DNA of 64,000 nt, taken from positions 1 through 64,000 of the IMG/VR virus record IMGVR_UViG_3300046787_000286. One strand, given 5' to 3'. Position numbers and translations under genes: made by a program. Positions 1,239 to 60,212 of this stretch are shown in pieces. Numbering within the stretch: position 1 is the first letter of the stretch; each line of letters starts with the position of its first letter. The notes under the pieces were generated by a model. It saw only the letters and a program-made list of their open reading frames with translations. It searched no databases and was not told where the DNA came from.

Positions 1239-4200
1239 ATGGCACGAGTTAGAACAGTAGAATTTTTACCTGAGATTTTTCAAACTTCCACAAATAAACA
1301 ATTTCTTGCAGCAACGTTAGATCAACTAGTACAAGAACCAGCGTTTACTAAAATACAAGGGTTTGTTGGTCGTCGGGTTGGACCTGGAGTTAATCCCAGC
1401 GACGAATACATCAAGGAAGAAACTGATGTAAGAACAAATTATCAACTTGAGCCTGGTGTTGTAATCAAGAAGTACGACACAAACGAAGTCAGGGATGTTA
1501 TTACATATCCTGGTATCACTGACGCTATGGGGCTAGCAGGCGGTTTCACAGACAACTCAGATAGATTATACACCAGCGACTATTATACTTGGGATCCGTT
1601 TATTGATCTTGACAAGTTTTCGAACTTTAGTCAATACTATTGGATTCCAGCTGGCCCTAACTCAGTGGATGTTTTTGCAGGCCAGCTGCCATTAACTGAC
1701 ACATTTGATGTTGTTAGAGAAAACGGTGTTTATACATTTGGCGGCATAAGTGGAGACAACCCAGTTATTCGCTTGGTGCGCGGTGGCTCATACAATTTTA
1801 ATGTAGCACAAAATTCTAAAGAAACAGTTAACTATCGTGTAACCAATGATGGTATATCTTCTTTTGTAATTGATTATCAAAATAACCCAACACTGACATT
1901 AGTCAGAGGCAATACCTATGTATTCAATCTAACAAGAAATGAATATGCGTTTTATATCAAAACAGATGATACGTTAGGTACAACAAATCAATATACCAGT
2001 GGAGTAACAAACAACGGTTCTGTCAATGGACGAGTTACATTTACTGTGCCGCAAGACGCTCCAGATACATTGTATTACTGCAATGACGTTCAACGAAATC
2101 TCAAAGGTACGTTAAACATTGTCGACGCAGTTCCAGGAACAGGACCAGGATTCTGGATTCAAGTTGACCCAGGAGTTGATGGTAAATTAATTTCTACACC
2201 TAACATTAGCAGCAGGGATGTGTTTGGTGTTGTTAACAACGGCGAAGACCTAGGCACTGTAACTTTTAATGTGCCGCTAGCAACTGATCAAAATTTCTAT
2301 TACAGTTTAACTAATATTAACAGTAGTCTAACAACCAACGGTGTTGACCTAGTTACTTCTTTAAAGTTTAACCAAATTAACAATGTTTTTGTTGATCAGT
2401 TCTTAATTCAGAACCCAACAGGCATCGATGGCATTACAAACTTAGACGGCAAAACAGTTATATTCTTAGAACAACAATCTGACGCCGAGGCCGGTGGCTG
2501 GGAAGTTACTACACAATTTGATCCACTAGTTGAATCTTCAGACAACAACGGTCGTCTAGGATCATACGATACAACATTGTTTGATCAGACTACAATTATC
2601 AATCCGGCACAACGTTATAGTGTGTGGCAAATAAGCTATGTTACTACCGAAGGCGGCAACAAATATCTTAAATTGAATCCTGTAATTGCAGTAAACAATC
2701 TCGAAAAGTTTTCAATTTTATCTGGGACTGCATACTCAAGCACTGAGTGGTTTAAAAATTCAGTTGGCGTGTTTGAGCAAGTTCCACTACTAACTGCGGT
2801 TAAAACAACCTTGTACTATCAAGACGCCACAGATCCAGAAATTTTTGGTAGAATTCAAATTGTTGACGAGCAAAATGCAGGAACGTTGGATGTTAACGAA
2901 ATCATTGGCAAGAAAAATTATACTAGCCCAAATGGTGTAGTGTTCACCAACGGATTAAAAATTACTTTCATTGGTAATGTTGAGCCGGCAAGCTATCAAA
3001 ACAACAGCTATTACATCGAAGGTGTTGGTACAGCAATTAAACTGCTACCAGTTGGAAATTTTGTAACTCCAGAAACATATACACAAAGCGCAACTATTCC
3101 TTACGATAGCAGTGCATACGATGTTGGTAACTTTGATGCAAGTTTAAACCAGCCGTTGGTCCCAGACTATCTTACTATCAATAGAGCAAGCCTTGATCTT
3201 AACCCGTGGACACGATCTAACCGTTGGTTCCACATTGATGTTATTAATGCGTCTGCAGAATACAACAATACTGTTCCGGTCCTGGATAATAATTTTAGAG
3301 CAAAACGCCCTATTATTGAATTCCGCGCTGGCACACGATTATTTGATTTCGGCACAGAAGGTAAAGAACCAGTTGACATTATTGATTTTGCTGCTACAGA
3401 TGCGTTAAGCACAATTAACGGTAGTGTGGGTTATAGTATCGACGGGTATTCGTTTATCAATGGCTCTAGAGTTATTTTTGCAGCAGATGCTGACCCAGCA
3501 GTTCGTAATAAAATTTACGTAGTTGAATTTATTACGCCAGACACAGTTGCACCTCTAATTGCAGAGCCAATTATCAATCTTGTGCCAGCGTCTGACGCAG
3601 ACATTAAAGCAGAACAAACTGTAGTATGTTTGTCTGGCATTATTCAACAAGGTAAGAGTTTCTACTTTGATGGCGTTGAGTGGTTAGAATCACAACAAAA
3701 GACTCAAACCAACCAGGCACCGTTGTTTAATGTGTATGACATTAACGGTGTTAGTCTCGGTGACCGTATTACATATCCATCAACTAACTTTGTTGGTAGT
3801 AGACTATTCTCGTACGCAGTAGGCACCGGCACAGATGATACTGTGTTAGGTTTCCCGCTAAAGTATTTGAGCTTGAGTAACGTTGGAGATATTGTATTTG
3901 ATAACAACTTATACTCGGACCAGTTCACCTACACCAAAGACAGTGTGTCAAATACTGAGTTTATTAGTCAAGGTAGCGTAAGAGAATACAGCACAAGAAT
4001 AGCGTATGTAAAAGAAATTGGCTGGCAACCGGCCGCAGCAAAAAGTGCAGCTAGACAACAGTTTAGCTTTACATATGACGGCAGTCCGTTAGTGTTAGAC
4101 ATTCCAGTTGATACAACTTCTGTGTTCCCGGCACTTCAAATTTATGTAAGCGGTATTTTTATTGACCCTAACGATTATACCTACACTGTGACCAACGATA

Positions 4201-7200
4201 CTACAACTATTGTAATCAATACTGTTGACGAGTTTGGTGGCATCGGTAGTAACATTGAAGTTGATGCATTAAGCAATCTAACAAGCAAATATGGATTCTA
4301 TCAAGTCCCTGTTAACTTAGAAAACAACCCATTAAACGGGAACAGTAAAACATTCACACTAGGTACAGTTAGATCTCACTATGAGTCTATTGGCGAAAAC
4401 CTTAAAGGGCTGACAGGCAAGATCAACGGTGCTAACAACAGCCGTGACCTAGGCAATATTATTCCCTACGGCGAAAATATCTTGCAACAAAGTTCGCCAA
4501 TGACTTTAGCTGGCTATTTTATGCGTAGCCAAGAATATAATATTTTTGCCTCGCTCGAATACAACAGCCGCGAATATGAAAAATTTAAAGCACAGTTGTT
4601 AGATACTGTAACTCGTAACGATTACACGAACTACACTATTCCTAACATGCTTACAGCAGCAATCAATGACATTAATACTGGCAAGATTGAAACATCGCCA
4701 TTTTACTGGTCAGACATGTTGCCAGCTAGTTCTATCTACAGCCAGAATGTTGTAAAAATTACTCCTATCAGTACAAATGTGTTTGATTTGTCGACCACTT
4801 ACGACTTTACAAGTTCGAATTACAAAGGATTGTTAGTTTACTTGAACGATACGCTGCTAACGATCGACAAAGATTACACTGTATCTTCGGATAGTCCTCA
4901 ATTAACTATCACAGCTACATTAGCTGTTGGTAATACTGTTACTATTAGAGAGTATCCTACTACCAATGGTAATTTTGTTCCAAACACTCCGACGAAAATG
5001 GGATTGTATCCTGCGTACAGACCACGCATTTATGTAGACACAAACTACGTAAATCCTCAAACAATGATTCTAGGACACGACGGCAGTCTAACTGTTGCGT
5101 TTGGTGATTTCCGTGACGAACTGTTGTTGGAGTTCGAAACTCGTATTTTTAATAACTTAAAAGTCCATAGTAAGATTCCAGTAACCGCAGTTGATGTTAT
5201 TCCTGGACAATTTAGAACAACTGATTATACACTAAACGAAATTAATACTATCTTGTCAACTGACTTCTTGAGTTGGATTGGCTGGAACAAACTTAACTAC
5301 CAGTCACAAGATTACGTTTCAACAAATGAGTTTACATGGAATTATAGTGCATGCGGTAACAAATTAACTGGACCGAATGAAGTTCCTGTGCCAGTTGGCG
5401 CATGGAGAGGGTTGTATCAATTCTTCTACGATACCACTAGCCCAAACACTACACCTTGGGAAATGCTTGGATTCAGTATTGAGCCAACATGGTGGGAAGA
5501 CGTATATGGTGCAGCACCATACACTAGCGACAACTTAGTTCTATGGGATGACCTTGCAGCCGGTAAAGTTGCAGATCCTTCTGGCGAGTATTACTTGCCG
5601 CAGTATGCTCGCCCACGTTTAACTGAAGTTATCCCAACTGGAACCGAGGGCGAATTGTTAAGCCCGTTCGACAGTGTAGTCGGCACTTATGATTCAAGTC
5701 AATTCCAAAAATCTTGGGCAGTTGGCGACGAAGGTCCAGTTGAGTACTCATGGAGAAGAAGTTCTAGCTATCCATTTGCAGTAATGCGTTTGTTGGCACT
5801 AACTCGTCCTGCAGAATTCTTCTCATTGTTTGCTGACAGAGATCTTTATAAGTTTGATACTGATTACAACCAGTATCTTTATAATGGACGTTATAGACTT
5901 GATGCTAACGGTGTTCAGGTATATGGCCTGGGTACAAGTAAAGCTAGTTTTATTAACTGGATTGTTGACTATAACCAGCAAACAGGAGTACACACTTCTG
6001 AAAATTTAACAAAAGATCTTGCAAGCCTTGACGTTCGCTTGTGCTATCGTGTTGGTGCGTTTACTGATAAACAATACTTAAAGATTTACACAGAGAAGTC
6101 TAGTCCGAATAGTTTGAATTCTAGCTTGTTGCTGCCAGACGAAAGTTATAGCTTGATGCTATACAAAAATCAACCGTTTGAACGCATAATATACAGTTCT
6201 GTTATTTTCCAAATGGTAGAAAATGGTTATGCAGTTTACGGTTATAGCATTACTGCGCCATATTTTAATACATTGGTTAGTAAAACTTACGGCACAAAAA
6301 CTACAATTAGTGCAGGCGGCCAAAGTATAACTGTTCCTACTCAGTACACAGATGAAGTTGTGCAGGTGCCGTACGGATATGTGTTTACTAACAAAACTGT
6401 AGTGATTGACTTCTTGTTAAGTTACGGTGCGTTACTCGAACAACAAGGTGTAGTGTTCAGCGACAGAGAAAATGGATACACTCTCAACTGGAATCAGATG
6501 GCTCAGGAATTTTTATATTGGGCTAATCAAGGATGGGAGCCAGGCGCAGTTATTAACCTTAATCCAACTGCATTTAGCTTAACTGCTATTCAGCCACAAG
6601 CTATTATTGATAGCATTGTGGCACAAACTCCTGAGAACAGTATACTTGACCAAAATAGATCTACTGTGCCTGTGCGCAACTTAGTAGTAGATCGTAACGA
6701 AAATGTCTTCAAGGTGTCGACATTAAATGAACAAACTATTAGCTATCTAGATCTTAAATTTACAAATTACGAAAGTATTGTTGTATTAGATAATATTAGT
6801 GTCTTCAATGATTTAATTTACGAACCTGTAACAGGCGCACGCCAAAGCAGAATTAACGTCACTGCTATTATTAATTCTGACTGGAACGGTCAATTAGATG
6901 CACAAGGATTTATTTTCAATAACAGTGCAACCATTGAGCCATGGTCTTCGTTGAAAAAATATGCCAAGGGCGAAATTGTTACCTATAAGAACAACTACTG
7001 GGCAGCGCAAACTATTGTGCAACCTAAGTTAGAATTTGATTACAGCGATTGGGTCAAGAGCGACTATACAAAAATTCAAAAGGGATTGCTGCAAAACTTA
7101 CCGAACCTAAGTGATCAATTGGCCAATTCTTATAACACAAATAGTGCTAACTTGGAAACAGATCAAGATTTAGTATCATTTGGGTTGATTGGATTCCGTC

Positions 7201-10200
7201 CTAGAGAATACATGTCTGCACTGAACCTTGACGACGTTAGTCAAGTTAACGTGTACAAACAATTCCTTAAGGATAAAGGAACAATTCGAAGCATACAACT
7301 GATTGGCAACGCCAAGGCAGACAAAGAAGTTGCAGAATACAGCCTTTACGAAAACTGGGCAATCCTTCGCGGAGCATACGGTGCCACTGCAAATAAGAGC
7401 TTCATTGAGTTAAGACTAAACGAAGCATTATTGTTAGCAGATCCTGCAACAATTCAAATTGTTAATGTTGGACAAGAAAGCCAGGCAGACCAGCAAATTT
7501 TATTAAGCGATTTGTGGAGACAAAGTTACAAGATCCCAACAACGGATGTATTCCCAACAACCACAACACCAATACAAGATTCTTCATTGCCTACTGCCGG
7601 CTATGTTAATCTTGACGACGTTGACATTACGGTGTTCTCGTTGGATGCTAATTTAGCATTAGCACCAGGTGTATTAAATTCTATTGGAGCAGGTACAACC
7701 ATCTGGGCTGCAAAAATTAATGCATATGATTGGGGGGTGTACCGTTGTATGCCAGTTCCTGGATCAGTGCAACAAGTAACTTCTAATTTGAATTCTACTG
7801 CGATTGTTACATTCACTGGTAAACACAATTTAGCATTAAATGATATTATTGTGATTCAAAACTTTGCTAGCAGCGTTGACGGAGTTCATCGAGTGTTATC
7901 AGTGCCATCTGCTAATACAGTAGTAATTGAAGCACCGATAACAAGAAATGTTATAGGCAGCGGCGTTGCAGTTGTTCTTAGAACCATGCGTGTTTCTCAA
8001 GCCAGTGACGTTATTAATTTAAGTTATGCCAATGAGCTTACTGCTGGTGCTAAAGCATGGGTAGACGACAACGGCAGTGGCTTATGGCAAGTGCTCGAAA
8101 AGCAAACCCCGTTCTCTCAGACAACAGTTGATTCTCTTCCATTGGATACACCTGTATACGGCGCACAATTTGGTAGTTCCGTGGCACAGGGTAATCAGAA
8201 TATTATTGCTGCTGTGGGCGCACCTGGGTATAGAACTCCTTACGAAGAGTCAACCCCAATTGGTGCAGTGTATCCTTATCTAAGAGATAATTCAAATAGA
8301 TATGCTGAGAATACTATACTTAATTTAGGAACAACTGGCACTCTTGGTTACGGCAATGCAGTTGACATTGGTTATCAAAGTTGGCTGGCAGCAGGCGCAA
8401 GTGCATCTAACAATAATATGGGGTATGCTTCGGCAGTATACCGAGCAGAAGATAGCAATTCGTTTGAACAACGACAGCTTCTAGTTGCTCCAGACCAGGA
8501 TTTTGGTAGCGGTGAATTTGGTTACTCTGTATCAGTTAGCAAAGACGAGCAATGGATGTATGTTGGCGCTCCGGGCAACAACAAAGTTTATGCATTTGCA
8601 CGTCGGGATGTAGAATTACAAGTATCTCGTCACACTACTAATGGAGTTACAAAAATTTATTCATTCACTAACGAAATTGTTATTGATCCTGAATATCCTG
8701 AACAACTTTCTGTAGTTTATAACAACAAATTGTTAACATATGGTGTTGACTATTCTGTAACTGGAACTAGTGTTGTATTGACTACATTACCTCCAGCTGA
8801 TCAGCTAGTTATTATTCAACGTAAACAAGGTCAGATACTAGATACTCAAACGTATTATGATTTAAGTCAAGATAGCACATCAGGTGCTGGTACCGGCGCA
8901 GTGTTTACAATTACAAACACACGAGGAGAATATTTTGTAACAATTTCTTCCCTAGGTGAAGACTATGTTGTCAGCGATACTGTAACATTTGATGGATCAA
9001 CCCTGGGAACAGAAAATTCTTTACCTAGTACTCCAACTACTCCTGCAAACGATTTAGTGTTAACAGTAACTGGTGTCGACGACAACGGTGGAATTACTGC
9101 ATTTACTATTAGCGGAAACGGTATAACAAACAATTATATTTTCCCTATTAATCCATATCTATATGGAATTGAAAATATTTGGTCAATGTCTGTAACAGTC
9201 AACGGAATTTTACAAAGACCGTTTATTGACTACGACTTTAATACCGACAGTGCAGAGGCGTTCGACATTGTGTTTAACACCGTGCCAGCCGCTGGTACAA
9301 ATATCGCAGTTACAGCAAAGACGCAATTTACATTTGTTGATACACTTTCTGTAACAGGGCTATCTCCGATAGATAGATTTGGTACAAGTCTCGCACAAAC
9401 AGACGGCGGAAGATTTGTTGTTGTTGGAGCATCCGATGCAAACACTACTGCTAATAAGAGCGGTGCTAGCTATGTGTTCAGCCGAGGATTTATCAAGTAC
9501 ATTATTGATGATGCGTCTCAAACAACATTTGAATTGCCAGCAGCGTTTAACAGTCCTGCGGCAGTGATCCTCAACGGACAGTATCTAACTAATTCTGCAC
9601 AGTATATCAACGGACAATATTCAATTGTTGGAACAGATGTAATCCTTAACAGTTCTGTAGTATTGAATGTTGGTGATGTGATTGAGATAGAAAATAATAT
9701 TTTCCATCTAATTCAAACTGTAGCAGCTGGGACTCCATCTGACAATGCTAAGTTTGGTAGCTCATTGGATATTTGCCCAACTAATTGTAGTCTTTACATC
9801 GGATCGCCAACTGATAGCTCAGTGCAAGCTCGAGCAGGATCAGTAGATCGATATGTAAACCAATCTAGATTATACGGAGTGATAACATCTACTAATGAGT
9901 ATCCAACCCTAGTACCAGGCGGGACTATTCTTGTTAGCGGCTTTGAAGTTACATTATCAACTCCCGAGACATGGGACTCGCTAGTAGAATACGCAAAAGG
10001 TGATTTTGTTATTACCAATGGTGATATTTACGAAGCTATTCGAACTGTTCCTGTCCCTACACAAATCACTAATACAGATTACTGGAAAGCAAGTAGTTGG
10101 ATTGAGCTACTATCGTCAGACATTAATTCTGCAAGTTTGCCAAATATTACATCGTCGGTTAGAAACGGTCTAATGACAATCAGTGTTATTAACTCAGACG

Positions 10201-13200
10201 CTGCAACAGAATTTAATAAACTATCAGTGCTACCGGGCATTACGTCTACACTGTTTGATGATGTAGGGTTCGACGTTTATGTACATACACAAACAATCAC
10301 AAGCCCTTATCCATCTGTGAATGCAAATTTTGGCACATCTTTGGCAATATCATCTGATGCATTGACATTGATTGTAGGTGCACCGGGCGGTAACACTTAT
10401 GAGCCTGTTACATTTGACGACAACACTACTGTATTCGATGATAGAAGTACAGCGTTCTTCTCATCAGTAATTGAAGGCGGTGTAGTGTATTCATATGATA
10501 TGTTACAGAGTGCAAACTCGAGCATTGCAAATCCTGTTAAATTTGTGTTTGGACAACAAATTTATAACAGCGGAGTAGAGCCACTTGACCAATGGGGCAC
10601 TGCGGTTAGTTATGTTAGCGGTAGATTGTTAGTGGGCGCACCGGGCAGTGACCTTGGCGATAGCTCAGTGAACTACGGCAAGGTAGGTGTATTTGAAAAT
10701 ACAACAAATCGACCAGCATGGTATCCTATACATGTTCAAGAGCCCACAGCAGATGTGACGTTGTTTAACAATGTCTACATGTATAATAAGCTGCAATCAA
10801 GTAAGACATACTTCCTTGATTATATCAATCCGTTACAAGGTAAAATTCTTGGAGCCGCAAGACAGAACATTGATTTTATCGGATCAGACGACCCTGCAAA
10901 ATATAATGCAGGTCCAATGAATAACAATGGTAATTTCTGGGCAGAAGAAAATGTAGGAAAAATTTGGTGGGATATTAGATCTGCTAGATTCATTGATCCA
11001 AGTCAGAATGACATTGTCTATACAAGCCGTCGATGGGGCCAACTATTCCCAGGAAGCACAGTTGACATTTATCAATGGGTTGAAAGTGCTGTTCCTCCAG
11101 CATCATATTCTGGACAAGGTACTCCATTAAATGTCACTAGTTATACAGTTAGAACAAACTTGAACCAACAAGGTGTGTTTGTCACTAGCTATTACTTCTG
11201 GGTGTCAGGTATTGATATCATTAATACCAACGCCGGTAAAACATTAAGCACAACAGGCATCGCAAGATATATTGAAAATCCTCGTAGCTCAGGAATCTCT
11301 TACATTGCACCAATTAATTCTAGCACAATCGCTTTGTATAATTCGATAGAATACCTAAGCGCATCAGATACTATTATTAACATTGGGTTTGATAGGGAAC
11401 GTAACGATGATAATATTCATACTGAATATGAATTGATTGCACAGGATAGTCCAGATAGCTTCTTGAGTGATAATTTGTATAAAAAGTTGCAAGATAGTTT
11501 CTGTGGAGTGAATGCTGCCGGTGCCCTTGTGCCAGACGTTACGTTGAGCCCAGCCGAACGTTATGGTGTTCAGTTCCGTCCTCGACAAAGCATGTTTGTG
11601 GACAGATTTAATGCTCTTAACAATTACCTAACATATTCTAACTCAGTGTTAGCGAAGTTCCCAATTACTGAAACTCGCTCATTCATCTTGTTGAATAGTT
11701 TGGAACCTGAGCCGACTGCTGCTAGCGGAGAATGGAATAAGAGATTAAACAACATTCAAGAATTGTCATATCAAAACTTGTCAGAAGTTAACATCGGTTA
11801 CAAATATCTAATAGATTCAGACAGTAGTAACGGCGGCTTATGGACTATCTACACAGTGGTCCAGGGTACTGACTTAATTGGCGCACCTCGTTATACTCAA
11901 CTATCAAGAGTGCAAAACTATGATACAAGAAAATATTGGAGTTATATCAATTGGTTCGAAACTGGATACAACAATACACAAGTTTTAGTCGCCGAAGTTC
12001 CAATTTACGCAGACTTGGTTACAATAGAATTAACCACCCCAGTTGGCGCTAGCGTAAAAGTTACTGCCAACGCACAAAACAAGTGGGAGATCTATCAACG
12101 AATTGTTGACGGATGGACTCGTGTTGGTTTAGAAGATGGCACAATTGCGTTTAGTGATGTGTTATGGGATTATGCTGCTGGACGATTTGGATTTGACGTT
12201 GAAGTTTTTGATGTGCAATACTTTGACTCGGAGCCAGTTATTGAAACTAGAAAAATCATCCAAGCAATTAACGAAGAATTGTTCATTGACGATTTAGCAA
12301 TTTATCGTAACAAAGCATTGATCTTGGCATTTAACTACATGCTGAGTGAGTTTGAAGCACCTGAGTGGTTAACTAAGACCAGTCTGATCGATGTAAATCA
12401 CAAGATTCGTGAGTTGTTGCCGTTCCAAATCTTCCGACAAGATAACCAAGACTTTGTGCTTGATTACATTCAAGAAGTTAAACCTTACCATGTACAAATT
12501 AGAGAATTTAATTTAACATACAATGGCCAGGACTTATATGATGGGCAAATGACTGACTTTGATGTGCCTGCATATTATGATCGCTTGCTTGATATTCCTC
12601 GTTACATTAGTCCAGTATTATTGCCATACACAAAGAGTGGCGCAGTAGGAACAGGAACTCCAAACGGGGATTCTGATGCATATAGCGACGCTGAAGTTTG
12701 GACACGTTGGCCTTGGAGTCAATGGTATACAAATTATCTGTTAAGCATTGAAAGTGTTAACATGATTGCCGGCGGCACAGGATACACAGAACCACCGTTA
12801 GTTACTGTGACTGGTGAGTGCGAGGTACCGGCTGAGCTGGAAGCAGTGATTAACAGTGCCGGAGCAGTTGTTGCAATCAATGTCATCGAACCGGGTGTTG
12901 GTTATTCAACTACAGCAGTGATTACCATTACTGAAGGTAACGGAGTCGGTGCAAGAGCTTATGCAGTTATGGGCAACCAACTGGTAAGATCTATTAAGAC
13001 TACTATCAAATATGATCGTTGCGAGTATACTTCGACTATTGTTAACTGGGAAGCGAACACAACTTATGCTGCCGGTAGTTTAGTACGTTACGAAGACCAA
13101 GTTTGGGAAGCAGATTCTAGTATTACAACCGCAACATTTGATCCAGATTTTTGGACACAAGTCCCGGCTAATATATTAGGTGCAGCTGATCGTGTACAAG

Positions 13201-15566
13201 GTTACTATGCGCCTACTGTTAATCAGCCAGGTGTGCAACTTCCATTAGTAATCGACGGAGTAGAATATCCTGGGGTGCAAGTTACAGGTCCAGACTTTAA
13301 TCAGAATACTGGTTTTGACATTGGAAACTTTGACATCAACCCATACGATAACTTGTCATACGGTCCAGAAGGACGCCCTACATATGATCCTGCTATCCTT
13401 GATGCAATTTATGAAAGTCCATACTTAGACCCGTTCCTTGGCACTCGTGCTACAGACGTTAATGTTGACGGCGGAGCATACGTTGATACATTCTCGAGCT
13501 TTGCTCCTGAAGAATTAGTTCCTGGCGCAGAGTTTGATACGCTTGATATGCGCATCTACACACGCCCTGGCTCAGATTGGGCAGCGGACGGACACGGGTT
13601 TAATTCGTATTCGTTTGCAATTGAAGTAAGTGAGCTTCCGCAGACTTACAATTTTGAATCGTGGTACACTTATGTTCCGTATCTAGTAACTGGGTTGTTA
13701 ACAAACCAAACAACCGGGGTTGAAATGCTACAAGGCATTAACTTTACTGTTAACTGGGGTGCAAAAGAGTTTACTATCACTTCAGGTTGTAATGTTGGCG
13801 ACTCACTAGTTGGCACAGCATACAGCGCAGGCGGCGGCAATCAATTGTACCGTAACAATTATGTTGGCAACGAGATTGTTTCTAACACAGTTAATGTTCC
13901 AGTATTGTTTACACAAATTCAAGAAGTTGATGTGTGGGTAAACGGTGCACCTTACACTAATGTAACTTACACCGCAGGTACAAATAATACAACTAATGTA
14001 TCGTTTGGGAACACGTTTACTAGCAGCGACTCAGTGGTTGTATATGTGCTAGGACCAACAACGCTTAACGGCACTCAGGTAAACTACAGTTGGAGTGCTC
14101 CTGTAACACAATATATTGTGGCTAACGGATCATCGTTGATATTTGATCTTGACAACAGTACAGATTATACAAACCCTGCTAACATGGTTGTTACTGTAAA
14201 TGGTGTTAGAGCAAGAACTGCCGGCGGAGTTGAATATTATGCTGACGGTAGTTCTGCATACTTGCTACCTGAACGATTGGGATTTAGCGATTCGATGGTT
14301 GCTGACAACGAAGTATTAGTTTATATCAATGATATTCCTCAAACACTTGGGTCTGACTTTATTGTAGAACCATACACTGGTGATCATCGACATGTTGTGT
14401 TTAACACAGCACCAGCCGACGGTGAGAGAATTTTGATTGCAGTTACAACAAATACTCAGGCACGTATTGACAGCGGTACTAACTTGTATTTTGATCCATC
14501 GCAAGGATTGATTCCAGTTGCGGGCGATATAATTACAGTTACTACCTGGAATGACACTCGTCAGCAAGACATTGTTACTACTGTATATGTTGGGCCAGTG
14601 CAATCGGGAGCTACTGTAACAGAAGGTTTTGACACTACAGATTATTCTCCAGCTACATTGAATAGTACTCCGGGAAGTTTTGATTACACTGCTGGTATTA
14701 TTGTTACTAACAACGAGCTATATCTGCCACGACCTGTTACAAACCCAGATCGTTTGTGGGTATCGTTAAACGGTAGAATATTGTTCTTTGGTGAAGATTA
14801 TACTATTGTAAACGACGAGATTATTTTAGCTAGAGGTGTTATTAATACCAATGACGTTGTAATGATTACTGAGTTTACAAATAGTATCAGCCCAGATGCT
14901 ATTGCGTTCCGTATATTCCAGGACATGCGTGGCGTCCAAGTAACTTTCAAAATTACACCTAACTCTACTACTGCGTTGGCGCAGACCCTCGGGGAGAATG
15001 ATGATGTGATTTATGTTGATGATGCGTCAGCTTTAGACGAACCAGAAATTACATCTAATATCTGGGGAGTATTGACTATCGGTGGCGAAAGAATTATGTA
15101 CCGAAATAGAGATATTGTTAATAACACTGTTAGCAGCCTACGTCGTGGCACTGCTGGCACTGCTATTACATCACATGAAGCAAGCACAGTTGTGTATGCA
15201 ATGGGTCGTGGTGAGGCTATGCCTACTGAATTCCAGAACTATATTGACAGCAACTACTTCTTGGGCAACGGGTCTACTGTGTCATTTGAAGCAACTAATA
15301 TTACATTCAGCGATACTGATAGTACATTAGAAGTTGATGCAGTTGAAGTTTGGGTAGGAGGTTCTAGAGTAACAAGTGGGTACACTATTACGGGGTCTAA
15401 CCCAGTTGGTGTCGAATTTGATATTGCACCCGCAGCCGGTACCGGGATTACTATTTTGGTACGTCGCGGTGTAAATTGGTATCAACCTGGTGTGAATACC
15501 CCAAGTGATGGTGTTGCGTTGCAAGATACTAACACTCCTGCGGCAAGGTTCTTACGCGGGCTGTAA
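1239..15566 (+). CDS. Giant (4775 aa) baseplate/tail-associated structural protein with FG-GAP-like blades, CBM5/12-like and Ig-like repeats
   Basis: N-terminus 'RTVEFLPEIFQT..NKQFLAATLDQL' is typical of wedge (gp7-like) proteins. Seven 'FG.S.A...L.VGAPG'-type motifs and three 'W....Y..G..V...G..W.A' motifs. Thr/Val/Asn-rich beta composition. Confidence 0.75.
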   Translation: MARVRTVEFLPEIFQTSTNKQFLAATLDQLVQEPAFTKIQGFVGRRVGPGVNPSDEYIKEETDVRTNYQLEPGVVIKKYDTNEVRDVITYPGITDAMGLAGGFTDNSDRLYTSDYYTWDPFIDLDKFSNFSQYYWIPAGPNSVDVFAGQLPLTDTFDVVRENGVYTFGGISGDNPVIRLVRGGSYNFNVAQNSKETVNYRVTNDGISSFVIDYQNNPTLTLVRGNTYVFNLTRNEYAFYIKTDDTLGTTNQYTSGVTNNGSVNGRVTFTVPQDAPDTLYYCNDVQRNLKGTLNIVDAVPGTGPGFWIQVDPGVDGKLISTPNISSRDVFGVVNNGEDLGTVTFNVPLATDQNFYYSLTNINSSLTTNGVDLVTSLKFNQINNVFVDQFLIQNPTGIDGITNLDGKTVIFLEQQSDAEAGGWEVTTQFDPLVESSDNNGRLGSYDTTLFDQTTIINPAQRYSVWQISYVTTEGGNKYLKLNPVIAVNNLEKFSILSGTAYSSTEWFKNSVGVFEQVPLLTAVKTTLYYQDATDPEIFGRIQIVDEQNAGTLDVNEIIGKKNYTSPNGVVFTNGLKITFIGNVEPASYQNNSYYIEGVGTAIKLLPVGNFVTPETYTQSATIPYDSSAYDVGNFDASLNQPLVPDYLTINRASLDLNPWTRSNRWFHIDVINASAEYNNTVPVLDNNFRAKRPIIEFRAGTRLFDFGTEGKEPVDIIDFAATDALSTINGSVGYSIDGYSFINGSRVIFAADADPAVRNKIYVVEFITPDTVAPLIAEPIINLVPASDADIKAEQTVVCLSGIIQQGKSFYFDGVEWLESQQKTQTNQAPLFNVYDINGVSLGDRITYPSTNFVGSRLFSYAVGTGTDDTVLGFPLKYLSLSNVGDIVFDNNLYSDQFTYTKDSVSNTEFISQGSVREYSTRIAYVKEIGWQPAAAKSAARQQFSFTYDGSPLVLDIPVDTTSVFPALQIYVSGIFIDPNDYTYTVTNDTTTIVINTVDEFGGIGSNIEVDALSNLTSKYGFYQVPVNLENNPLNGNSKTFTLGTVRSHYESIGENLKGLTGKINGANNSRDLGNIIPYGENILQQSSPMTLAGYFMRSQEYNIFASLEYNSREYEKFKAQLLDTVTRNDYTNYTIPNMLTAAINDINTGKIETSPFYWSDMLPASSIYSQNVVKITPISTNVFDLSTTYDFTSSNYKGLLVYLNDTLLTIDKDYTVSSDSPQLTITATLAVGNTVTIREYPTTNGNFVPNTPTKMGLYPAYRPRIYVDTNYVNPQTMILGHDGSLTVAFGDFRDELLLEFETRIFNNLKVHSKIPVTAVDVIPGQFRTTDYTLNEINTILSTDFLSWIGWNKLNYQSQDYVSTNEFTWNYSACGNKLTGPNEVPVPVGAWRGLYQFFYDTTSPNTTPWEMLGFSIEPTWWEDVYGAAPYTSDNLVLWDDLAAGKVADPSGEYYLPQYARPRLTEVIPTGTEGELLSPFDSVVGTYDSSQFQKSWAVGDEGPVEYSWRRSSSYPFAVMRLLALTRPAEFFSLFADRDLYKFDTDYNQYLYNGRYRLDANGVQVYGLGTSKASFINWIVDYNQQTGVHTSENLTKDLASLDVRLCYRVGAFTDKQYLKIYTEKSSPNSLNSSLLLPDESYSLMLYKNQPFERIIYSSVIFQMVENGYAVYGYSITAPYFNTLVSKTYGTKTTISAGGQSITVPTQYTDEVVQVPYGYVFTNKTVVIDFLLSYGALLEQQGVVFSDRENGYTLNWNQMAQEFLYWANQGWEPGAVINLNPTAFSLTAIQPQAIIDSIVAQTPENSILDQNRSTVPVRNLVVDRNENVFKVSTLNEQTISYLDLKFTNYESIVVLDNISVFNDLIYEPVTGARQSRINVTAIINSDWNGQLDAQGFIFNNSATIEPWSSLKKYAKGEIVTYKNNYWAAQTIVQPKLEFDYSDWVKSDYTKIQKGLLQNLPNLSDQLANSYNTNSANLETDQDLVSFGLIGFRPREYMSALNLDDVSQVNVYKQFLKDKGTIRSIQLIGNAKADKEVAEYSLYENWAILRGAYGATANKSFIELRLNEALLLADPATIQIVNVGQESQADQQILLSDLWRQSYKIPTTDVFPTTTTPIQDSSLPTAGYVNLDDVDITVFSLDANLALAPGVLNSIGAGTTIWAAKINAYDWGVYRCMPVPGSVQQVTSNLNSTAIVTFTGKHNLALNDIIVIQNFASSVDGVHRVLSVPSANTVVIEAPITRNVIGSGVAVVLRTMRVSQASDVINLSYANELTAGAKAWVDDNGSGLWQVLEKQTPFSQTTVDSLPLDTPVYGAQFGSSVAQGNQNIIAAVGAPGYRTPYEESTPIGAVYPYLRDNSNRYAENTILNLGTTGTLGYGNAVDIGYQSWLAAGASASNNNMGYASAVYRAEDSNSFEQRQLLVAPDQDFGSGEFGYSVSVSKDEQWMYVGAPGNNKVYAFARRDVELQVSRHTTNGVTKIYSFTNEIVIDPEYPEQLSVVYNNKLLTYGVDYSVTGTSVVLTTLPPADQLVIIQRKQGQILDTQTYYDLSQDSTSGAGTGAVFTITNTRGEYFVTISSLGEDYVVSDTVTFDGSTLGTENSLPSTPTTPANDLVLTVTGVDDNGGITAFTISGNGITNNYIFPINPYLYGIENIWSMSVTVNGILQRPFIDYDFNTDSAEAFDIVFNTVPAAGTNIAVTAKTQFTFVDTLSVTGLSPIDRFGTSLAQTDGGRFVVVGASDANTTANKSGASYVFSRGFIKYIIDDASQTTFELPAAFNSPAAVILNGQYLTNSAQYINGQYSIVGTDVILNSSVVLNVGDVIEIENNIFHLIQTVAAGTPSDNAKFGSSLDICPTNCSLYIGSPTDSSVQARAGSVDRYVNQSRLYGVITSTNEYPTLVPGGTILVSGFEVTLSTPETWDSLVEYAKGDFVITNGDIYEAIRTVPVPTQITNTDYWKASSWIELLSSDINSASLPNITSSVRNGLMTISVINSDAATEFNKLSVLPGITSTLFDDVGFDVYVHTQTITSPYPSVNANFGTSLAISSDALTLIVGAPGGNTYEPVTFDDNTTVFDDRSTAFFSSVIEGGVVYSYDMLQSANSSIANPVKFVFGQQIYNSGVEPLDQWGTAVSYVSGRLLVGAPGSDLGDSSVNYGKVGVFENTTNRPAWYPIHVQEPTADVTLFNNVYMYNKLQSSKTYFLDYINPLQGKILGAARQNIDFIGSDDPAKYNAGPMNNNGNFWAEENVGKIWWDIRSARFIDPSQNDIVYTSRRWGQLFPGSTVDIYQWVESAVPPASYSGQGTPLNVTSYTVRTNLNQQGVFVTSYYFWVSGIDIINTNAGKTLSTTGIARYIENPRSSGISYIAPINSSTIALYNSIEYLSASDTIINIGFDRERNDDNIHTEYELIAQDSPDSFLSDNLYKKLQDSFCGVNAAGALVPDVTLSPAERYGVQFRPRQSMFVDRFNALNNYLTYSNSVLAKFPITETRSFILLNSLEPEPTAASGEWNKRLNNIQELSYQNLSEVNIGYKYLIDSDSSNGGLWTIYTVVQGTDLIGAPRYTQLSRVQNYDTRKYWSYINWFETGYNNTQVLVAEVPIYADLVTIELTTPVGASVKVTANAQNKWEIYQRIVDGWTRVGLEDGTIAFSDVLWDYAAGRFGFDVEVFDVQYFDSEPVIETRKIIQAINEELFIDDLAIYRNKALILAFNYMLSEFEAPEWLTKTSLIDVNHKIRELLPFQIFRQDNQDFVLDYIQEVKPYHVQIREFNLTYNGQDLYDGQMTDFDVPAYYDRLLDIPRYISPVLLPYTKSGAVGTGTPNGDSDAYSDAEVWTRWPWSQWYTNYLLSIESVNMIAGGTGYTEPPLVTVTGECEVPAELEAVINSAGAVVAINVIEPGVGYSTTAVITITEGNGVGARAYAVMGNQLVRSIKTTIKYDRCEYTSTIVNWEANTTYAAGSLVRYEDQVWEADSSITTATFDPDFWTQVPANILGAADRVQGYYAPTVNQPGVQLPLVIDGVEYPGVQVTGPDFNQNTGFDIGNFDINPYDNLSYGPEGRPTYDPAILDAIYESPYLDPFLGTRATDVNVDGGAYVDTFSSFAPEELVPGAEFDTLDMRIYTRPGSDWAADGHGFNSYSFAIEVSELPQTYNFESWYTYVPYLVTGLLTNQTTGVEMLQGINFTVNWGAKEFTITSGCNVGDSLVGTAYSAGGGNQLYRNNYVGNEIVSNTVNVPVLFTQIQEVDVWVNGAPYTNVTYTAGTNNTTNVSFGNTFTSSDSVVVYVLGPTTLNGTQVNYSWSAPVTQYIVANGSSLIFDLDNSTDYTNPANMVVTVNGVRARTAGGVEYYADGSSAYLLPERLGFSDSMVADNEVLVYINDIPQTLGSDFIVEPYTGDHRHVVFNTAPADGERILIAVTTNTQARIDSGTNLYFDPSQGLIPVAGDIITVTTWNDTRQQDIVTTVYVGPVQSGATVTEGFDTTDYSPATLNSTPGSFDYTAGIIVTNNELYLPRPVTNPDRLWVSLNGRILFFGEDYTIVNDEIILARGVINTNDVVMITEFTNSISPDAIAFRIFQDMRGVQVTFKITPNSTTALAQTLGENDDVIYVDDASALDEPEITSNIWGVLTIGGERIMYRNRDIVNNTVSSLRRGTAGTAITSHEASTVVYAMGRGEAMPTEFQNYIDSNYFLGNGSTVSFEATNITFSDTDSTLEVDAVEVWVGGSRVTSGYTITGSNPVGVEFDIAPAAGTGITILVRRGVNWYQPGVNTPSDGVALQDTNTPAARFLRGL

Positions 15567-15583: not shown

Positions 15584-15742
15584 ATGGATCAAAAAGATAG
15601 CAATGCACAACAACCCAAGGAGACTGTGGAACAGCAGTCTCCTAAAAAGCGCCCAAATGAAACTGGGAGTATTAGTGTTGAAGGCTTTGTAAGTATTTTT
15701 GATCCAAATACAAAAGAAAAATTTGTGGAGAAACGAGCATGA
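15584..15742 (+). CDS. 52-aa protein (missed by ORF track), paralogous to the N-terminus of the next gene
   Basis: MDQKDSNAQQPKETVEQQSPKKRPNETGSISVEGFVSIFDPNTKEKFVEKRA*; ATGA overlap with 15739. Confidence 0.7.
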   Translation: MDQKDSNAQQPKETVEQQSPKKRPNETGSISVEGFVSIFDPNTKEKFVEKRA

Positions 15743-16344
15743 TTCAGCCTGGTTTGGCTAAAATTGAAGGGTTTGTAAAAATTCACGACCCTGTTAGCAA
15801 AGAAGTATTTGTTGACAAAAAGAACGCTATTCATTACGAAAACATTAGTATTGCAATGGCTCAGACTTTGAGCAATAGAGATCTGGGCTGGATATACACT
15901 ATGGCGTTTGGTAATGGCGGAAGTTCAGTTGACCCAACTGGAGTTATTACGTATTTGCCACCGAACACTACTGGCCAGAACGCTGATTTGTATAACGAAA
16001 CGTATGCAAAAGTAGTTGATGATAATTCAAGCGCAAACACTGATGCCACCAACAACAAAATGACAGTACTACATACAACTGGTAAAGTTTATACTGATAT
16101 TCTTGTAACATGTTTGTTAGATTACGGCGAGCCACCAGGGCAACAAGCGTTTGATAATTCAACAAACTTCAACGGTGAATATGTATTTGACGAATTAGGA
16201 CTAAAGTGCTGGAATGGTGCAGTAGACAATCTAAGATTGATTACACACGTAATTTTTCACCCAGTACAAAAGAGTTTGAACCGTCAGATTCAAATTGATT
16301 ATACATTACGAATCCAAACTTTGACTAATTTAAGTCAAGCGTAA
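15739..16344 (+). CDS. Virion structural protein (baseplate/tail-fibre attachment-like)
   Basis: 201 aa within the structural block. 'AFGNGG...L..ETY.K' and 'FDELGL' motifs resemble phage tail-collar/gp53-H-type N-terminal proteins. Confidence 0.55.
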   Translation: MIQPGLAKIEGFVKIHDPVSKEVFVDKKNAIHYENISIAMAQTLSNRDLGWIYTMAFGNGGSSVDPTGVITYLPPNTTGQNADLYNETYAKVVDDNSSANTDATNNKMTVLHTTGKVYTDILVTCLLDYGEPPGQQAFDNSTNFNGEYVFDELGLKCWNGAVDNLRLITHVIFHPVQKSLNRQIQIDYTLRIQTLTNLSQA

Positions 16345-16361
16345 TATGTATAGATTATCGG

Positions 16362-16371
16362 TAAATAAATA
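16362..16371 (+). promoter_or_regulatory. Putative late promoter (tandem TAAATAAATA)
   Basis: Intergenic, upstream of RBS GGAG and ATG 16396. Confidence 0.55.
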
Positions 16372-16395
16372 AATTAAGGACACGGAGTAACCCAA

Positions 16396-17685
16396 ATGGC
16401 ATATACAATCAATCTAACTGATGGCGCAATCTTTGCTACTATTGCAGACGGCACTATCAACACATCTAGTTCAATGATTTTAGTAGGTAAGAACTACGCT
16501 GGCTACGGCGAGTTTATAGACGAAAACTTCATCCACTTGCTAGAAAATTCATCAAACACAACAGCCCCGGGCGCACCACTAACTGGTCAGATCTGGTGGG
16601 ATTCCGGCAATGGAATTTTAAACGTTTACAACGGCTCTGCCTGGAAACGTATCGGTGGTGCAACTGCAAGCGCAAGTGCTCCGAGTGGCGCAACAAGCGA
16701 GCAGGGCGACTTGTGGTATGATTCAACCAACGCACAGTTGAAAGTTTATACTGGAGCTGCTTGGTTATTAGTTGGCCCAGCGTTTACTGCTGGCACTGGA
16801 ACCACAGGCGCGATTGTTGACACTATTGTTGATAACGTTGCTGTTAGCCACGTTGTTATTAAATTCTATGTTGAAGATAGCGTTGTAGCAATTATGAGCA
16901 AAGATGCTACCTTTACTCCACAGTCGTCTATTACAGGATTTACAACAGTTCGTCCAGGCATGACAATGGCAACAACAGTTGGCGGCCAAACTCCATTGTT
17001 CCAAGGAACTGCAACAGATTCACAATTGCTCGACGGTATTGATTCTACAGGCTTTTTGAGCGCAACTAGTAACGATACTACAACTGGTACACTAGGTATC
17101 TTGAATGATTCTGGTCTATCAGTTGGTCAAGATAGCGATGCTAAGTTGAGCGTTTCTGGCGCAGGTGTTGTTACACTTGCTAACCAAACAAGCGGCCAAA
17201 ATATGACATTCTCTGTTAACGTTGGCGGAACCCCAACTACTGCATTGACAATCTACGGTGCAAACGGTACAGTAAGTGGTAATCAAATTAATGCTAACTA
17301 TGCCGACGTTGCAGAACGTTTTGCAGCAGACGAAGTATACGAAGCAGGTACTGTTGTTGAGCTCGGTGGCGCTAATGAAATTACAAGAGTTACTTCGGAC
17401 CTAAGCGATAAAGTATTTGGTGTCATAAGTACTAGAGCAGCTTATCTAATGAACAGCGCCGCTGGTAATGATGAAACTCATCCTCCAGTTGCTATGACCG
17501 GTCGTGTTCCAGTTAAAGTCATTGGACAAATTAACAAAGGTGATCGTTTAGTATCAGCAGGTAACGGTATTGCAAGAGCTGCACAACCAGGCGAAGCAAC
17601 AGCTTTCAACGTTATCGGTCGTAGCCTAACTGCCAAGGCAGACTCAAGTCTAGGCACAGTTGAAGCGATTGTAACGATCAAATAA
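16396..17685 (+). CDS. Tail fibre protein with C-terminal intramolecular chaperone (peptidase G2/S74-like)
   Basis: N-terminal 'GKNYAGYGE...ENF.HLLEN...P...GQIWWD' fibre anchor. C-terminal 'YADVAERF...YEAGTVV..GG..EIT...GVIS...P.AMTGRVPVKV' autocleavage chaperone pattern. Confidence 0.75.
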   Translation: MAYTINLTDGAIFATIADGTINTSSSMILVGKNYAGYGEFIDENFIHLLENSSNTTAPGAPLTGQIWWDSGNGILNVYNGSAWKRIGGATASASAPSGATSEQGDLWYDSTNAQLKVYTGAAWLLVGPAFTAGTGTTGAIVDTIVDNVAVSHVVIKFYVEDSVVAIMSKDATFTPQSSITGFTTVRPGMTMATTVGGQTPLFQGTATDSQLLDGIDSTGFLSATSNDTTTGTLGILNDSGLSVGQDSDAKLSVSGAGVVTLANQTSGQNMTFSVNVGGTPTTALTIYGANGTVSGNQINANYADVAERFAADEVYEAGTVVELGGANEITRVTSDLSDKVFGVISTRAAYLMNSAAGNDETHPPVAMTGRVPVKVIGQINKGDRLVSAGNGIARAAQPGEATAFNVIGRSLTAKADSSLGTVEAIVTIK

Positions 17686-33309: not shown

Positions 33310-33407
33310 AATGGATTAAAAATCTATGGGCAAGGATCACGTTAGAAATACGTTATCGTAAAAAACTAAAAGAACTACGTAAACGCGACCCATTTATCTA
33401 CAAATGA
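33306..33407 (+). CDS. 33-aa basic peptide (missed by ORF track)
   Basis: MKWIKNLWARITLEIRYRKKLKELRKRDPFIYK*; ATGA overlaps at both ends. Confidence 0.7.
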   Translation: MKWIKNLWARITLEIRYRKKLKELRKRDPFIYK

Positions 33408-59527: not shown

Positions 59528-59541
59528 TGCAGTCTCCTGAT

Positions 59542-59877: not shown

Positions 59878-59883
59878 AATTTT

Positions 59884-60111: not shown

Positions 60112-60131
60112 AAAATATCTAAGTTAGTTGT

Positions 60132-60205: not shown

Positions 60206-60212
60206 TAATTAC

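What the first reader, a model, noticed from the sequence alone, without database searches (positions are those of the whole stretch)
8150..10700. Seven integrin-like FG-GAP blades split by large domain insertions in the 4775-aa virion protein
Seen: blade motifs near 8160 (GAQFGSSVA..AVGAPG), 8346 (GYGNAVDI..LAAGA), 8517 (FGYSVSV..MYVGAPG), 9378 (FGTSLA..VVVGA), 9753 (FGSSLD..LYIGSP), 10329 (FGTSLAI..LIVGAPG) and 10593 (WGTAVS..LLVGAPG), with inserts of roughly 100-290 aa between several blades. Established: seven FG-GAP repeats form the integrin-alpha beta-propeller. Inference: a propeller hub displaying Ig-like and carbohydrate-binding arms on the baseplate, acting as an adhesin-like receptor-binding platform.
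Basis: partly seen in the sequence, partly recalled or inferred. Interest (0 to 1): 0.6.

Follow-up and report, generated by a model that had tools for sequence, protein, structure and literature searches.

The report
Integrin-like propeller in giant phage protein
A 4775-residue baseplate-region protein of an uncultured freshwater-type jumbo phage contains a closed seven-bladed FG-GAP (integrin-alpha-like) beta-propeller whose loops carry small domains that are swapped in and out among relatives, most likely a display scaffold for host-surface binding.

Summary
All seven FG...GAP-type motifs sit at the stated coordinates, inside ORF 1239..15566 (4775 aa). Pfam FG-GAP_2 passes its cut-off (E=1.7e-10), and these are its only hits in the 214-kb phage record.

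An AlphaFold2 model of aa 2270-3190 (57-sequence alignment, pLDDT 89, pTM 0.88) superposes end to end on integrin-alpha propellers: Z 36-40, rmsd 2.7-3.0 A, 350-380 residues, 17-20% identity. It also superposes on complete seven-bladed WD40 rings. The stated refutation test is therefore passed.

The inserts are nested domains:
- three copies of a ~60-aa T7-fibre-N-terminal/XD2-like beta-domain, which recurs about 10 times in the giant;
- an unassigned ~110-aa beta-domain;
- a 45-aa CBM5/12-like cassette plus a ~60-aa module.

Across at least 240 metagenomic relatives the blades keep their length, while cassettes come and go at about 8 sites. Cultured relatives (PA5oct, Serratia BF, Atu_ph07) lack the propeller. 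They have 115-1515 unrelated residues at the same point, so the propeller is a lineage-specific accessory module at an insertion hot spot.

It is not an integrin: it has no Ca2+ loops and no integrin context. Baseplate location (synteny, PA5oct mass spectrometry) and an adhesin role are inferred, not shown.

The parts
1239..15566 (+). Giant ORF (4775 aa, P0001). It is a homologue of the giant virion structural proteins of PA5oct (gp355), Atu_ph07 (gp180) and Serratia BF (gp235).
   Evidence: (phrog_10938, E=1.9e-283)
8106..10730 (+). Propeller module, aa 2290-3164: seven FG-GAP blades plus nested inserts. This is the part of the model that aligns to integrin alpha residues 1..452.
   Evidence: model range 21..895 of segment 2270-3190
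8154..8642 (+). Blades 1-3 (aa 2306-2362, 2363-2420, 2421-2468), contiguous, four strands each.
8643..8831 (+). Insert 3-4, domain a (aa 2469-2531): small beta-domain of the T7 gp17 N-terminal / CBA120 TSP4 XD2 fold. Present in all 57 relatives compared.
   Evidence: (Z 8.6-9.9, rmsd 1.1-1.3 A over 61-65 residues)
8832..9161 (+). Insert 3-4, domain b (aa 2532-2641): ~110-aa all-beta domain with no assigned fold. It is present in 34 of 57 relatives and reduced to a 17-18 aa linker in most of the others.
   Evidence: (best Z 5.2)
9162..9365 (+). Insert 3-4, domain c (aa 2642-2709): second copy of the small domain, related to domain a by HMM (i-E 1.5e-7).
9366..9503 (+). Blade 4 (aa 2710-2755), the best single FG-GAP_2 match.
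   Evidence: (E=2.2e-5)
9504..9689 (+). Insert 4-5 (aa 2756-2817): third copy of the small domain (weaker HMM link), between two long strands of 14-15 residues.
9690..9890 (+). Blade 5 (aa 2818-2884), with an invariant CxxxC (C2846, C2850; nt 9774-9788).
9891..10280 (+). Insert 5-6 (aa 2885-3014). It holds a 45-aa CBM5/12-like cassette (aa 2907-2951, nt 9957-10091) followed by a ~60-aa helix/strand module. The cassette is present in 33 of 57 relatives and cleanly absent in the rest.
   Evidence: CBM_5_12, E=0.0014; F2-pyocin tail fibre, E=6e-4
10281..10739 (+). Blades 6-7 (aa 3015-3110, 3111-3167), the most conserved part. Blade 6 carries a constant 33-aa loop with invariant D3060 and D3067.
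2..1237 (+). Upstream neighbour: C-terminal part of a baseplate wedge subunit, homologous to PA5oct gp354.
   Evidence: (phrog_10646, E=1.9e-93)
15739..17685 (+). Downstream neighbours. The 201-aa protein is homologous to PA5oct gp357. The 429-aa fibre-like protein has a Peptidase_G2 intramolecular-chaperone domain and is homologous to PA5oct gp359 and to the N-terminus of gp358.

Best explanation
Shown by sequence and modelling: aa ~2290-3164 of the giant virion protein fold as a closed seven-bladed FG-GAP beta-propeller of the integrin-alpha type. It lacks integrin's Ca2+ hairpins. Folded domains are nested at three successive places on the ring (blades 3/4, 4/5, 5/6): three copies of a ~60-aa T7-fibre-N-terminal/XD2-like domain, one unassigned ~110-aa beta-domain, and a CBM5/12-like cassette plus a small helix/strand module.

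Shown by comparison: the blades are length-invariant and better conserved, while cassettes of about 45-110 aa are gained and lost at about 8 defined sites. The whole module sits at a hypervariable point of an otherwise conserved giant protein. Cultured relatives carry 115-1515 unrelated residues there.

Inferred: the giant occupies the position after the gp6-like wedge gene and is a peripheral baseplate protein. The propeller is a rigid, lineage-specific display scaffold on its outside that presents exchangeable binding modules to the host envelope (glycan adhesion or primary, reversible attachment). Cassette turnover would then tune host specificity.
For: Fold and closure:
- Model pLDDT 89.4, pTM 0.88.
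- The top 50 PDB entries by VIA-align are all integrin alpha: Z 36-40, rmsd 2.7-3.0 A, 350-380 residues, 17-20% identity, model 21..895 against chain 1..452.
- An unbiased search of 48,161 chains again puts integrins at ranks 1-9. Complete 7-bladed WD40 rings also align end to end (290 of 293 and 298 of 305 residues).

Family: FG-GAP_2 is above its cut-off here and in all seven relatives scanned (42-59 bits).

Inserts: Z 8.6-9.9 to fibre N-terminal domains; Phage_T7_tail, E=1.8e-4 in a relative; CBM5/12-like.

Modularity:
- Searches give the segment lengths.
- On a tree built from blade columns only, the CBM cassette changes state at least 8 times and domain b at least 6 times.
- Majority-residue fraction is 0.50-0.67 in the blades against 0.32-0.34 in domain b and the CBM cassette.

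Accessory nature: no tblastn match in 50,697 phage records. The flanks are conserved but the middle is replaced in PA5oct, BF and Atu_ph07.

Context: baseplate wedge upstream and fibre downstream, syntenic with PA5oct genes whose products were found in virions by ESI-MS/MS.

Precedent: other viral FG-GAP propellers exist, including an Atu_ph07 'hemagglutinin'.
Against: - No experimental structure exists and no cultured member carries the module. I could not inspect model coordinates, so the face on which the inserts emerge and the exact strand bearing each insert are not established.
- Location in the baseplate is positional. hhalign found no similarity to T4 gp7 or gp6, and phmmer found no solved relative of the giant.
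- The CBM5/12 call is sub-threshold on its own.
- The always-present small domains resemble protein-protein docking domains rather than receptor binders.
- The most conserved surfaces (blades 6-7) argue for a fixed partner.
- No ligand, host or binding is known.
Confidence: 0.55

Rival explanations
1. Fibre-docking adaptor. The T7-fibre-N-terminal/XD2-like domains on the propeller are protein-protein attachment sites that hold separate fibres or spikes (for example the downstream 429-aa fibre). The module would branch the adsorption apparatus, as T4 gp10 and CBA120 TSP4 do.
For: The small domain's best structural matches are all fibre-to-tail attachment domains (the A4 paper PMC12002296 calls XD2 a conserved attachment motif). 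The three copies are present in every relative, unlike the variable cassettes. Fibre genes that share an ~80-aa N-terminus lie just downstream.
Against: PA5oct and Serratia BF have homologous fibres and the giant protein but no propeller, so docking of those fibres does not need it. The known XD and gp17-N domains act within trimers, whereas here they are single nested inserts. The same domain recurs about 10 times along the giant, which suggests a generic building block. No complex was predicted or tested.
Confidence: 0.2
2. Purely architectural element. The propeller is a rigid strut or inter-subunit contact in an enlarged jumbo-phage baseplate and has no ligand-binding role.
For: Blade length is constant and blades 3-7 are well conserved. 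A constant 33-aa loop and the invariant FGQQI and CxxxC motifs fit fixed protein contacts. T7-type nozzle proteins use a seven-bladed propeller as a structural core with inserted domains.
Against: The module is dispensable in related phages. Repeated gain and loss of surface cassettes, including a CBM-like one, is the pattern of host-interaction proteins rather than struts.
Confidence: 0.15
3. Enzyme. The propeller is the catalytic domain of a depolymerase or lyase acting on host polysaccharide.
For: Some seven-bladed propellers among the lower structural matches are enzymes (CylK Z 33.4, virginiamycin B lyase Z 31.3). There is a CBM-like module nearby.
Against: Integrin alpha ranks first with the highest sequence identity. 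No enzyme family was detected by Pfam or PHROGs. No conserved catalytic-type motif was identified.
Confidence: 0.05

Closest known systems
Integrin alpha-subunit beta-propeller, especially alpha-I integrins (alphaM, alphaX, alphaL)
   Same: Seven FG-GAP repeats forming a closed seven-bladed ring. These are the best structural matches (Z 36-40, 17-20% identity). Alpha-I integrins also carry a whole domain nested between two blades.
   Different: No DxDxDGxxD Ca2+ hairpins. No thigh/calf legs, membrane anchor or beta-subunit. There are three insertion points (3/4, 4/5, 5/6) rather than one (2/3, from my own knowledge of integrins), and the inserted folds are phage-type domains rather than a VWA domain. 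The context is a bacteriophage virion protein.
Pfam FG-GAP_2 (PF14312) proteins of bacteria and viruses, e.g. Atu_ph07 'hemagglutinin' A0A2L0UZX4, 'FG-GAP repeat' proteins of uncultured Caudovirales, and FG-GAP proteins of giant viruses
   Same: Same repeat family above its cut-off. Predicted propellers of viral proteins match the model.
   Different: Those are mostly stand-alone propellers of about 400-900 aa. Here the propeller is embedded at aa 2290-3164 of a 4775-aa protein and carries nested cassettes. [quoted passage not shown]
T7-type nozzle protein (T7 gp12; cyanophage A4 gp31, PDB 9k09_U)
   Same: A phage tail protein built on a seven-bladed propeller that bridges inserted platform, fibre-dock, tip and insertion domains. 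It matches both the propeller (Foldseek E=2e-7) and the small domain (Z 9.9, 28% identity).
   Different: It is not an FG-GAP propeller and is a far weaker match than integrins (outside the top 50 by Z). It is a hexameric channel-forming protein of podophages, with no sequence homology detected.
Tail-attachment domain of phage fibres and spikes (Pfam Phage_T7_tail PF03906; CBA120 TSP4 XD2; T4 gp10-type domains)
   Same: The fold of the three small inserts. There are weak Pfam hits in relatives, and the family is precomputed in one relative.
   Different: Here the domain is nested in propeller loops and repeated about 10 times within one polypeptide, rather than sitting at the N-terminus of a trimeric fibre.
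Giant virion structural proteins of jumbo phages (PHROG 10938: PA5oct gp355, Atu_ph07 gp180, Serratia BF gp235)
   Same: Homologous N-terminal, central and C-terminal blocks. Same gene position after the large wedge subunit. The PA5oct protein is in the virion by MS.
   Different: None of them has the propeller. At the same point they carry 300, 1515 and 115 aa respectively.

Membership tests
FG-GAP repeat propeller (Pfam FG-GAP_2, PF14312) | Sequence match to the repeat model above the curated cut-off | tested here: met
   41.3 bits against 23, E=1.7e-10. Five of seven blades are detectable singly. Seven relatives score 42-59 bits.
FG-GAP repeat propeller (Pfam FG-GAP_2, PF14312) | Seven repeats closing a seven-bladed beta-propeller | tested here: met
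   This is an AF2 model, not an experimental structure. pLDDT 89.4, pTM 0.88. It superposes over whole integrin and WD40 seven-bladed rings.
Integrin alpha subunit | Ca2+-binding DxDxDGxxD hairpins in the C-terminal blades | tested here: not met
   No such motif in any blade or anywhere else in the protein.
Integrin alpha subunit | Thigh/calf domains, transmembrane helix, pairing with a beta subunit | tested here: not met
   The sequence after the propeller is homologous to the PA5oct giant protein. No integrin families were found by Pfam. A beta-subunit partner was not searched for.
T4 gp7-type baseplate wedge protein | Detectable homology to T4 gp7 | tested here: inconclusive
   hhalign of five profile segments against the single T4 gp7 and gp6 sequences gave probabilities of 2.7 or less. 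phmmer against PDB gave nothing. The test is weak because the template was a single sequence.
T4 gp7-type baseplate wedge protein | Gene position directly after the gp6-like wedge gene, product in the virion | tested here: met
   Wedge subunit upstream. The synteny hub, wedge, giant, 201-aa protein, fibres is shared with PA5oct, where the products carry ESI-MS/MS notes. Virion presence of this particular protein was not tested.
CBM5/12 carbohydrate-binding module (insert 5-6) | Match to PF02839 above its cut-off | tested here: inconclusive
   The insert alone scores 19.1 bits against 26.2, E=0.0014. The whole protein passes (30 bits, 2 stretches, best at 3936-3963). The profile hits the F2-pyocin tail fibre at E=6e-4. 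Sugar binding was not tested.
Phage_T7_tail / XD2 fibre-attachment domain (small inserts) | Fold match over the whole domain | tested here: met
   Z 8.6-9.9, rmsd 1.1-1.3 A over 61-65 of 65 residues, 18-28% identity. The Pfam hits in relatives are below the cut-off.

The most novel reading that the evidence does not exclude
The propeller is a natural 'plug-in board'. It would be a rigid FG-GAP ring, acquired by one uncultured jumbo-phage lineage at a recombination hot spot of its giant baseplate protein, into whose outer loops binding cassettes (CBM-like, fibre-dock-like, unknown folds) are repeatedly inserted and removed to retarget host range. That would be a mode of receptor-binding diversification distinct from swapping fibre tips.
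Probability: 0.3. Interest if true: 0.65.

Novelty: new variant of a known kind. Interest (0 to 1): 0.5.

Why it matters
FG-GAP propellers are textbook eukaryotic adhesion domains, and they are almost undescribed in phages. The held literature has no paper joining 'FG-GAP' with 'jumbo phage', and only giant-virus papers join it with phage tail or baseplate terms.

Here a large, purely metagenomic clade of ~330-345-kb phages (at least 240 protein clusters) embeds one in its largest virion protein and decorates it with exchangeable cassettes. If the module is exposed and binds the host, it has two uses. It gives a concrete structural handle for predicting host range in uncultured jumbo phages. 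It also offers a compact, loop-tolerant scaffold that could be useful for engineering phage binding modules.

The comparison also pinpoints an insertion hot spot in the giant protein shared by PA5oct-, Rak2/BF- and Atu_ph07-like phages.

Tried and rejected
- megablast and tblastn of the module against 50,697 phage records: no match. No cultured relative carries the module.
- phmmer of the whole giant against PDB sequences: nothing.
- Profile of the module against PDB sequences: only the CBM-like stretch hits (F2-pyocin fibre, E=6e-4). The galectin hits at E>0.2 were disregarded.
- hhalign of five segments of the giant against T4 gp7 and gp6: no signal. 'gp7 homologue' is therefore not claimed, only the gp7 position.
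- Foldseek of insert 3-4 against PDB: nothing at E<=0.001. The VIA wide search was needed to identify domain a. Domain b stayed unassigned: best Z 5.2, ESM Atlas shape search TM<0.5, language-model neighbours unnamed.
- The Atlas lead for insert 5-6 (chitin-binding GbpA_2, score 0.84) is a lead only.
- Pfam hits CBM_X2 (E=0.011) and CBM39 (E=0.076) on the small domains were judged noise, given the better fold match.
- A search for integrin-type Ca2+ motifs was negative.
- Two atlas calls failed on a length limit and were resent with part references. One fold search failed on the server and was resent.
- Not run: complex prediction, because no binding claim is made; the large representative search, because it was not needed; the read-mapping tools.
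Full report
**Observation**

The window belongs to a 214-kb IMG/VR virus record estimated 62% complete. ORF 1239..15566 encodes a 4775-aa protein. The FG dipeptides are at aa 2311, 2371, 2427, 2714, 2839, 3031 and 3119, each followed 12-14 residues later by a hydrophobic strand ending in GAP, GA or GSP.

This is well beyond chance.
- A loose FG-x-S/A/T-hydrophobic pattern occurs 8 times in the protein, 7 of them in this stretch.
- Pfam FG-GAP_2 scores 41.3 bits against a cut-off of 23 (E=1.7e-10).
- Blades 1, 3, 4, 6 and 7 hit the model even when scanned alone.
- A six-frame search of the whole 214-kb record finds FG-GAP_2 only at 8466-10685.

**Relatives**

No cultured phage in a 50,697-record collection matches the region at DNA or protein level. 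IMG/VR holds 143 relatives. The 80 kept are 31-92% identical over the full 881 aa, and all lie inside open frames of 4400-5340 aa where the contig is long enough.

The 5.8-billion-protein collection gives 240 clusters, all metagenomic. Their longest contigs are 329-342 kb. The only public name is 'hypothetical protein UFOVP328_225 [uncultured Caudovirales phage]'.

**Fold**

I aligned 57 non-redundant sequences (A1) and predicted aa 2270-3190. The model has mean pLDDT 89.4 and pTM 0.88.

Foldseek returned propellers, with the best target-normalised TM-scores for integrin alpha5 (0.54-0.57). Realigned with VIA-align, the top 50 entries are all integrin alpha chains: Z 36-40, rmsd 2.7-3.0 A, 350-380 aligned residues, 17-20% identity. 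Model residues 21..895 cover chain residues 1..452, the entire integrin propeller.

A search that does not depend on Foldseek (48,161 representative chains) again ranks integrins 1-9. Below them come complete seven-bladed WD40 rings aligned almost residue for residue, for example 290 of 293 and 298 of 305 residues.

Aligned on their FG, the seven repeats share one four-strand DSSP pattern. This is a prediction, not an experiment. I could not open the coordinates, so which face the inserts leave from and which strand closes the ring remain unexamined.

**Not an integrin**

There is no DxDxDGxxD Ca2+ motif in any blade. No integrin leg domains are detected. The sequence that follows the propeller is homologous to other phage giant proteins. 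The correct family statement is 'FG-GAP_2 propeller', structurally closest to integrin alpha.

**Inserts**

I folded insert 3-4 separately (A2; pLDDT 91.8).
- Its first 65 residues match the N-terminal tail-attachment domain of podophage fibres and related domains: cyanophage A4 9k09_U, LME-1, P-SCSP1u, Carin-1, T7 gp17 and CBA120 TSP4 XD2. The best matches have Z 8.6-9.9, rmsd 1.1-1.3 A and 18-28% identity. True Ig domains score about 3.4.
- The A4 paper describes XD2-like head-binding domains as a conserved fibre-attachment motif. It also describes the A4 nozzle as a seven-bladed propeller bridging inserted domains (PMC12002296).
- HMMs built from the copies show that domain c (aa 2642-2709) and, more weakly, insert 4-5 (aa 2756-2817) are the same domain. 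It recurs about ten times along the giant, for example near aa 966, 1195, 4226, 4361, 4503 and 4712.
- Two relatives give sub-threshold Pfam Phage_T7_tail hits, and one relative has the family precomputed.
- The ~110-aa middle domain b has no convincing match.
- Insert 5-6 begins with a 45-aa CBM5/12-like motif. Pfam gives E=0.0014, below its cut-off. The profile matches the F2-pyocin tail fibre at E=6e-4. The Atlas lead is weak. A ~60-aa helix/strand module follows.

**Comparison of insert content among relatives**

Blade segments keep nearly constant length in all 57 sequences. Blade 6, for example, is 85 residues in all but three. The variation is discrete:

| Site | Variation among the 57 sequences |
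|---|---|
| Domain b | ~101-117 aa in 29 sequences, shortened to 65-78 aa in five, a 17-28 aa linker in the rest |
| CBM-like cassette | 44-49 aa or 2-9 aa |
| Blade 1 loop | extra module of ~65-70 aa in 12 sequences, ~140 aa in one |
| Blade 2 loop | extra module of ~65-70 aa in 6 sequences |
| After domain c | extra module of ~65-70 aa in 11 sequences |
| After the CBM cassette | extra module of ~65 aa in 4 sequences |
| Insert 4-5 | extra module in 1 sequence |
| Before the CBM cassette | extra module in 2 sequences |

The smallest natural modules are ~765-778 aa. On a quick maximum-likelihood tree built from blade columns only, the CBM cassette changes state at least 8 times and domain b at least 6 times. 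Majority-residue conservation is 0.50-0.67 in the blades and 0.32-0.34 in domain b and the CBM cassette. The best-conserved stretches lie mostly in blades 3 and 5-7, including an FGQQI strand, a CxxxC in blade 5, and a constant 33-aa loop in blade 6 with two invariant aspartates.

**Place in the giant protein and in the virion**

PHROG 10938 ('virion structural protein') covers aa 979-1899. tblastn links this block to the giants of PA5oct, Atu_ph07, SCTP-2 and Rak2/BF-like phages at 24-30% identity.

Pairwise BLAST shows the same pattern in three cultured phages. The conserved blocks end at about aa 2079-2171 of this protein and resume at about 3148-3174. The corresponding gap is 300 aa in PA5oct, 115 aa in Serratia BF and 1515 aa in Atu_ph07, and none has FG-GAP motifs there. 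The propeller is thus one of several lineage-specific fillings of an insertion hot spot, not part of the conserved core.

The gene order is wedge subunit, giant, 201-aa protein, fibres. It matches PA5oct gp354-gp360, whose products carry ESI-MS/MS virion notes. The downstream 429-aa protein has a fibre intramolecular-chaperone domain. Direct homology to T4 gp7 was not detectable, so baseplate placement is positional inference.

**Mechanism**

I consider it most likely (about 0.55, with the structural part near 0.9) that the module is an exposed, rigid display scaffold whose exchangeable cassettes contact host envelope glycans. The rivals are:
- a docking adaptor for separate fibres (0.2). The fold of the constant small domains favours it. 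Its dispensability in relatives that have the same fibres weakens it.
- a purely architectural strut (0.15);
- an enzyme (0.05).

**Novelty**

The fold and the repeat family are known, and predicted FG-GAP propellers occur in other viral proteins. I found no description of FG-GAP propellers in phage tails or jumbo phages in the held literature. [quoted passage not shown]

The new elements are the embedding in a giant baseplate-region protein, the triple nested insertion and the cassette turnover. I rate this a new variant of a known kind.

Noticed in passing
window 21878-32279 (+), and 33404-34885 (+): Seven ORFs in a row (21878-23269, 24178-25620, 25611-27314, 27311-28696, 28693-29901, 29885-30997, 30984-32279) all hit PHROG radical-SAM families 14086/1802. 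After one unassigned ORF comes a Nol/NodU-like carbamoyltransferase (phrog_1601, E=2e-93). This is an unusually long tandem array of radical-SAM paralogues right after the tail-fibre genes.
   Followed up: partly
P0001 aa ~966-1000, 1195-1237, 2481-2530, 2644-2705, 2767-2817, 4226-4268, 4361-4403, 4503-4531, 4712-4739 (window ~4134-15455): A ~40-60-aa domain with the motif 'V.VNG..L....DYTV.G..V.F...P..G..I' recurs about ten times along the giant protein. The copy folded here has the T7 gp17 N-terminal/XD2 fold.
   Followed up: partly
window ~7475-7750 and ~10680-10760 (aa ~2079-2171 and ~3148-3174 of P0001): These conserved flanks bracket an insertion hot spot shared by jumbo-phage giant proteins: 115 aa in Serratia BF gp235, 300 aa in PA5oct gp355, 1515 aa in Atu_ph07 gp180, and ~1000 aa (the propeller) here.
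   Followed up: yes
window 9774-9788 (C2846, C2850) and 10383-10481 (blade 6 loop, D3060, D3067): There is an invariant CxxxC in the strand 1-2 loop of blade 5. Blade 6 has a constant-length 33-aa loop with two invariant aspartates. These are candidate disulfide, metal or ligand sites in a propeller that lacks integrin-type Ca2+ motifs.
   Followed up: no
window ~6945-7090 (aa ~1903-1950) and 13044-13127 (aa 3936-3963): The giant has two further CBM5/12-like motifs outside the propeller. The one near aa 1903-1950 falls in a gap of the PA5oct alignment, so it is another optional cassette.
   Followed up: partly
window 12741-13067 (aa ~3835-3943): A repeat of the type 'GGTGYT..P.VTVTG...' matches the C-terminal part of PHROG 1922 (baseplate hub/tail lysozyme) and PHROG 460 (head closure Hc2). 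Similar repeats occur inside the Atu_ph07-specific insert.
   Followed up: no
window 16396-17685 (+): This 429-aa fibre-like protein has a Peptidase_G2 intramolecular-chaperone domain (E=2.9e-7). Its first ~80 aa are homologous to the N-termini of both PA5oct gp358 (gp10-like) and gp359, which suggests a shared attachment domain.
   Followed up: partly
window 59069-62312 (-): A cluster of five tRNA genes (Leu-GAG, Val-GAC, Leu-TAG, Cys-GCA, Asn-GTT) plus one ARAGORN call with an abnormal two-base anticodon.
   Followed up: no
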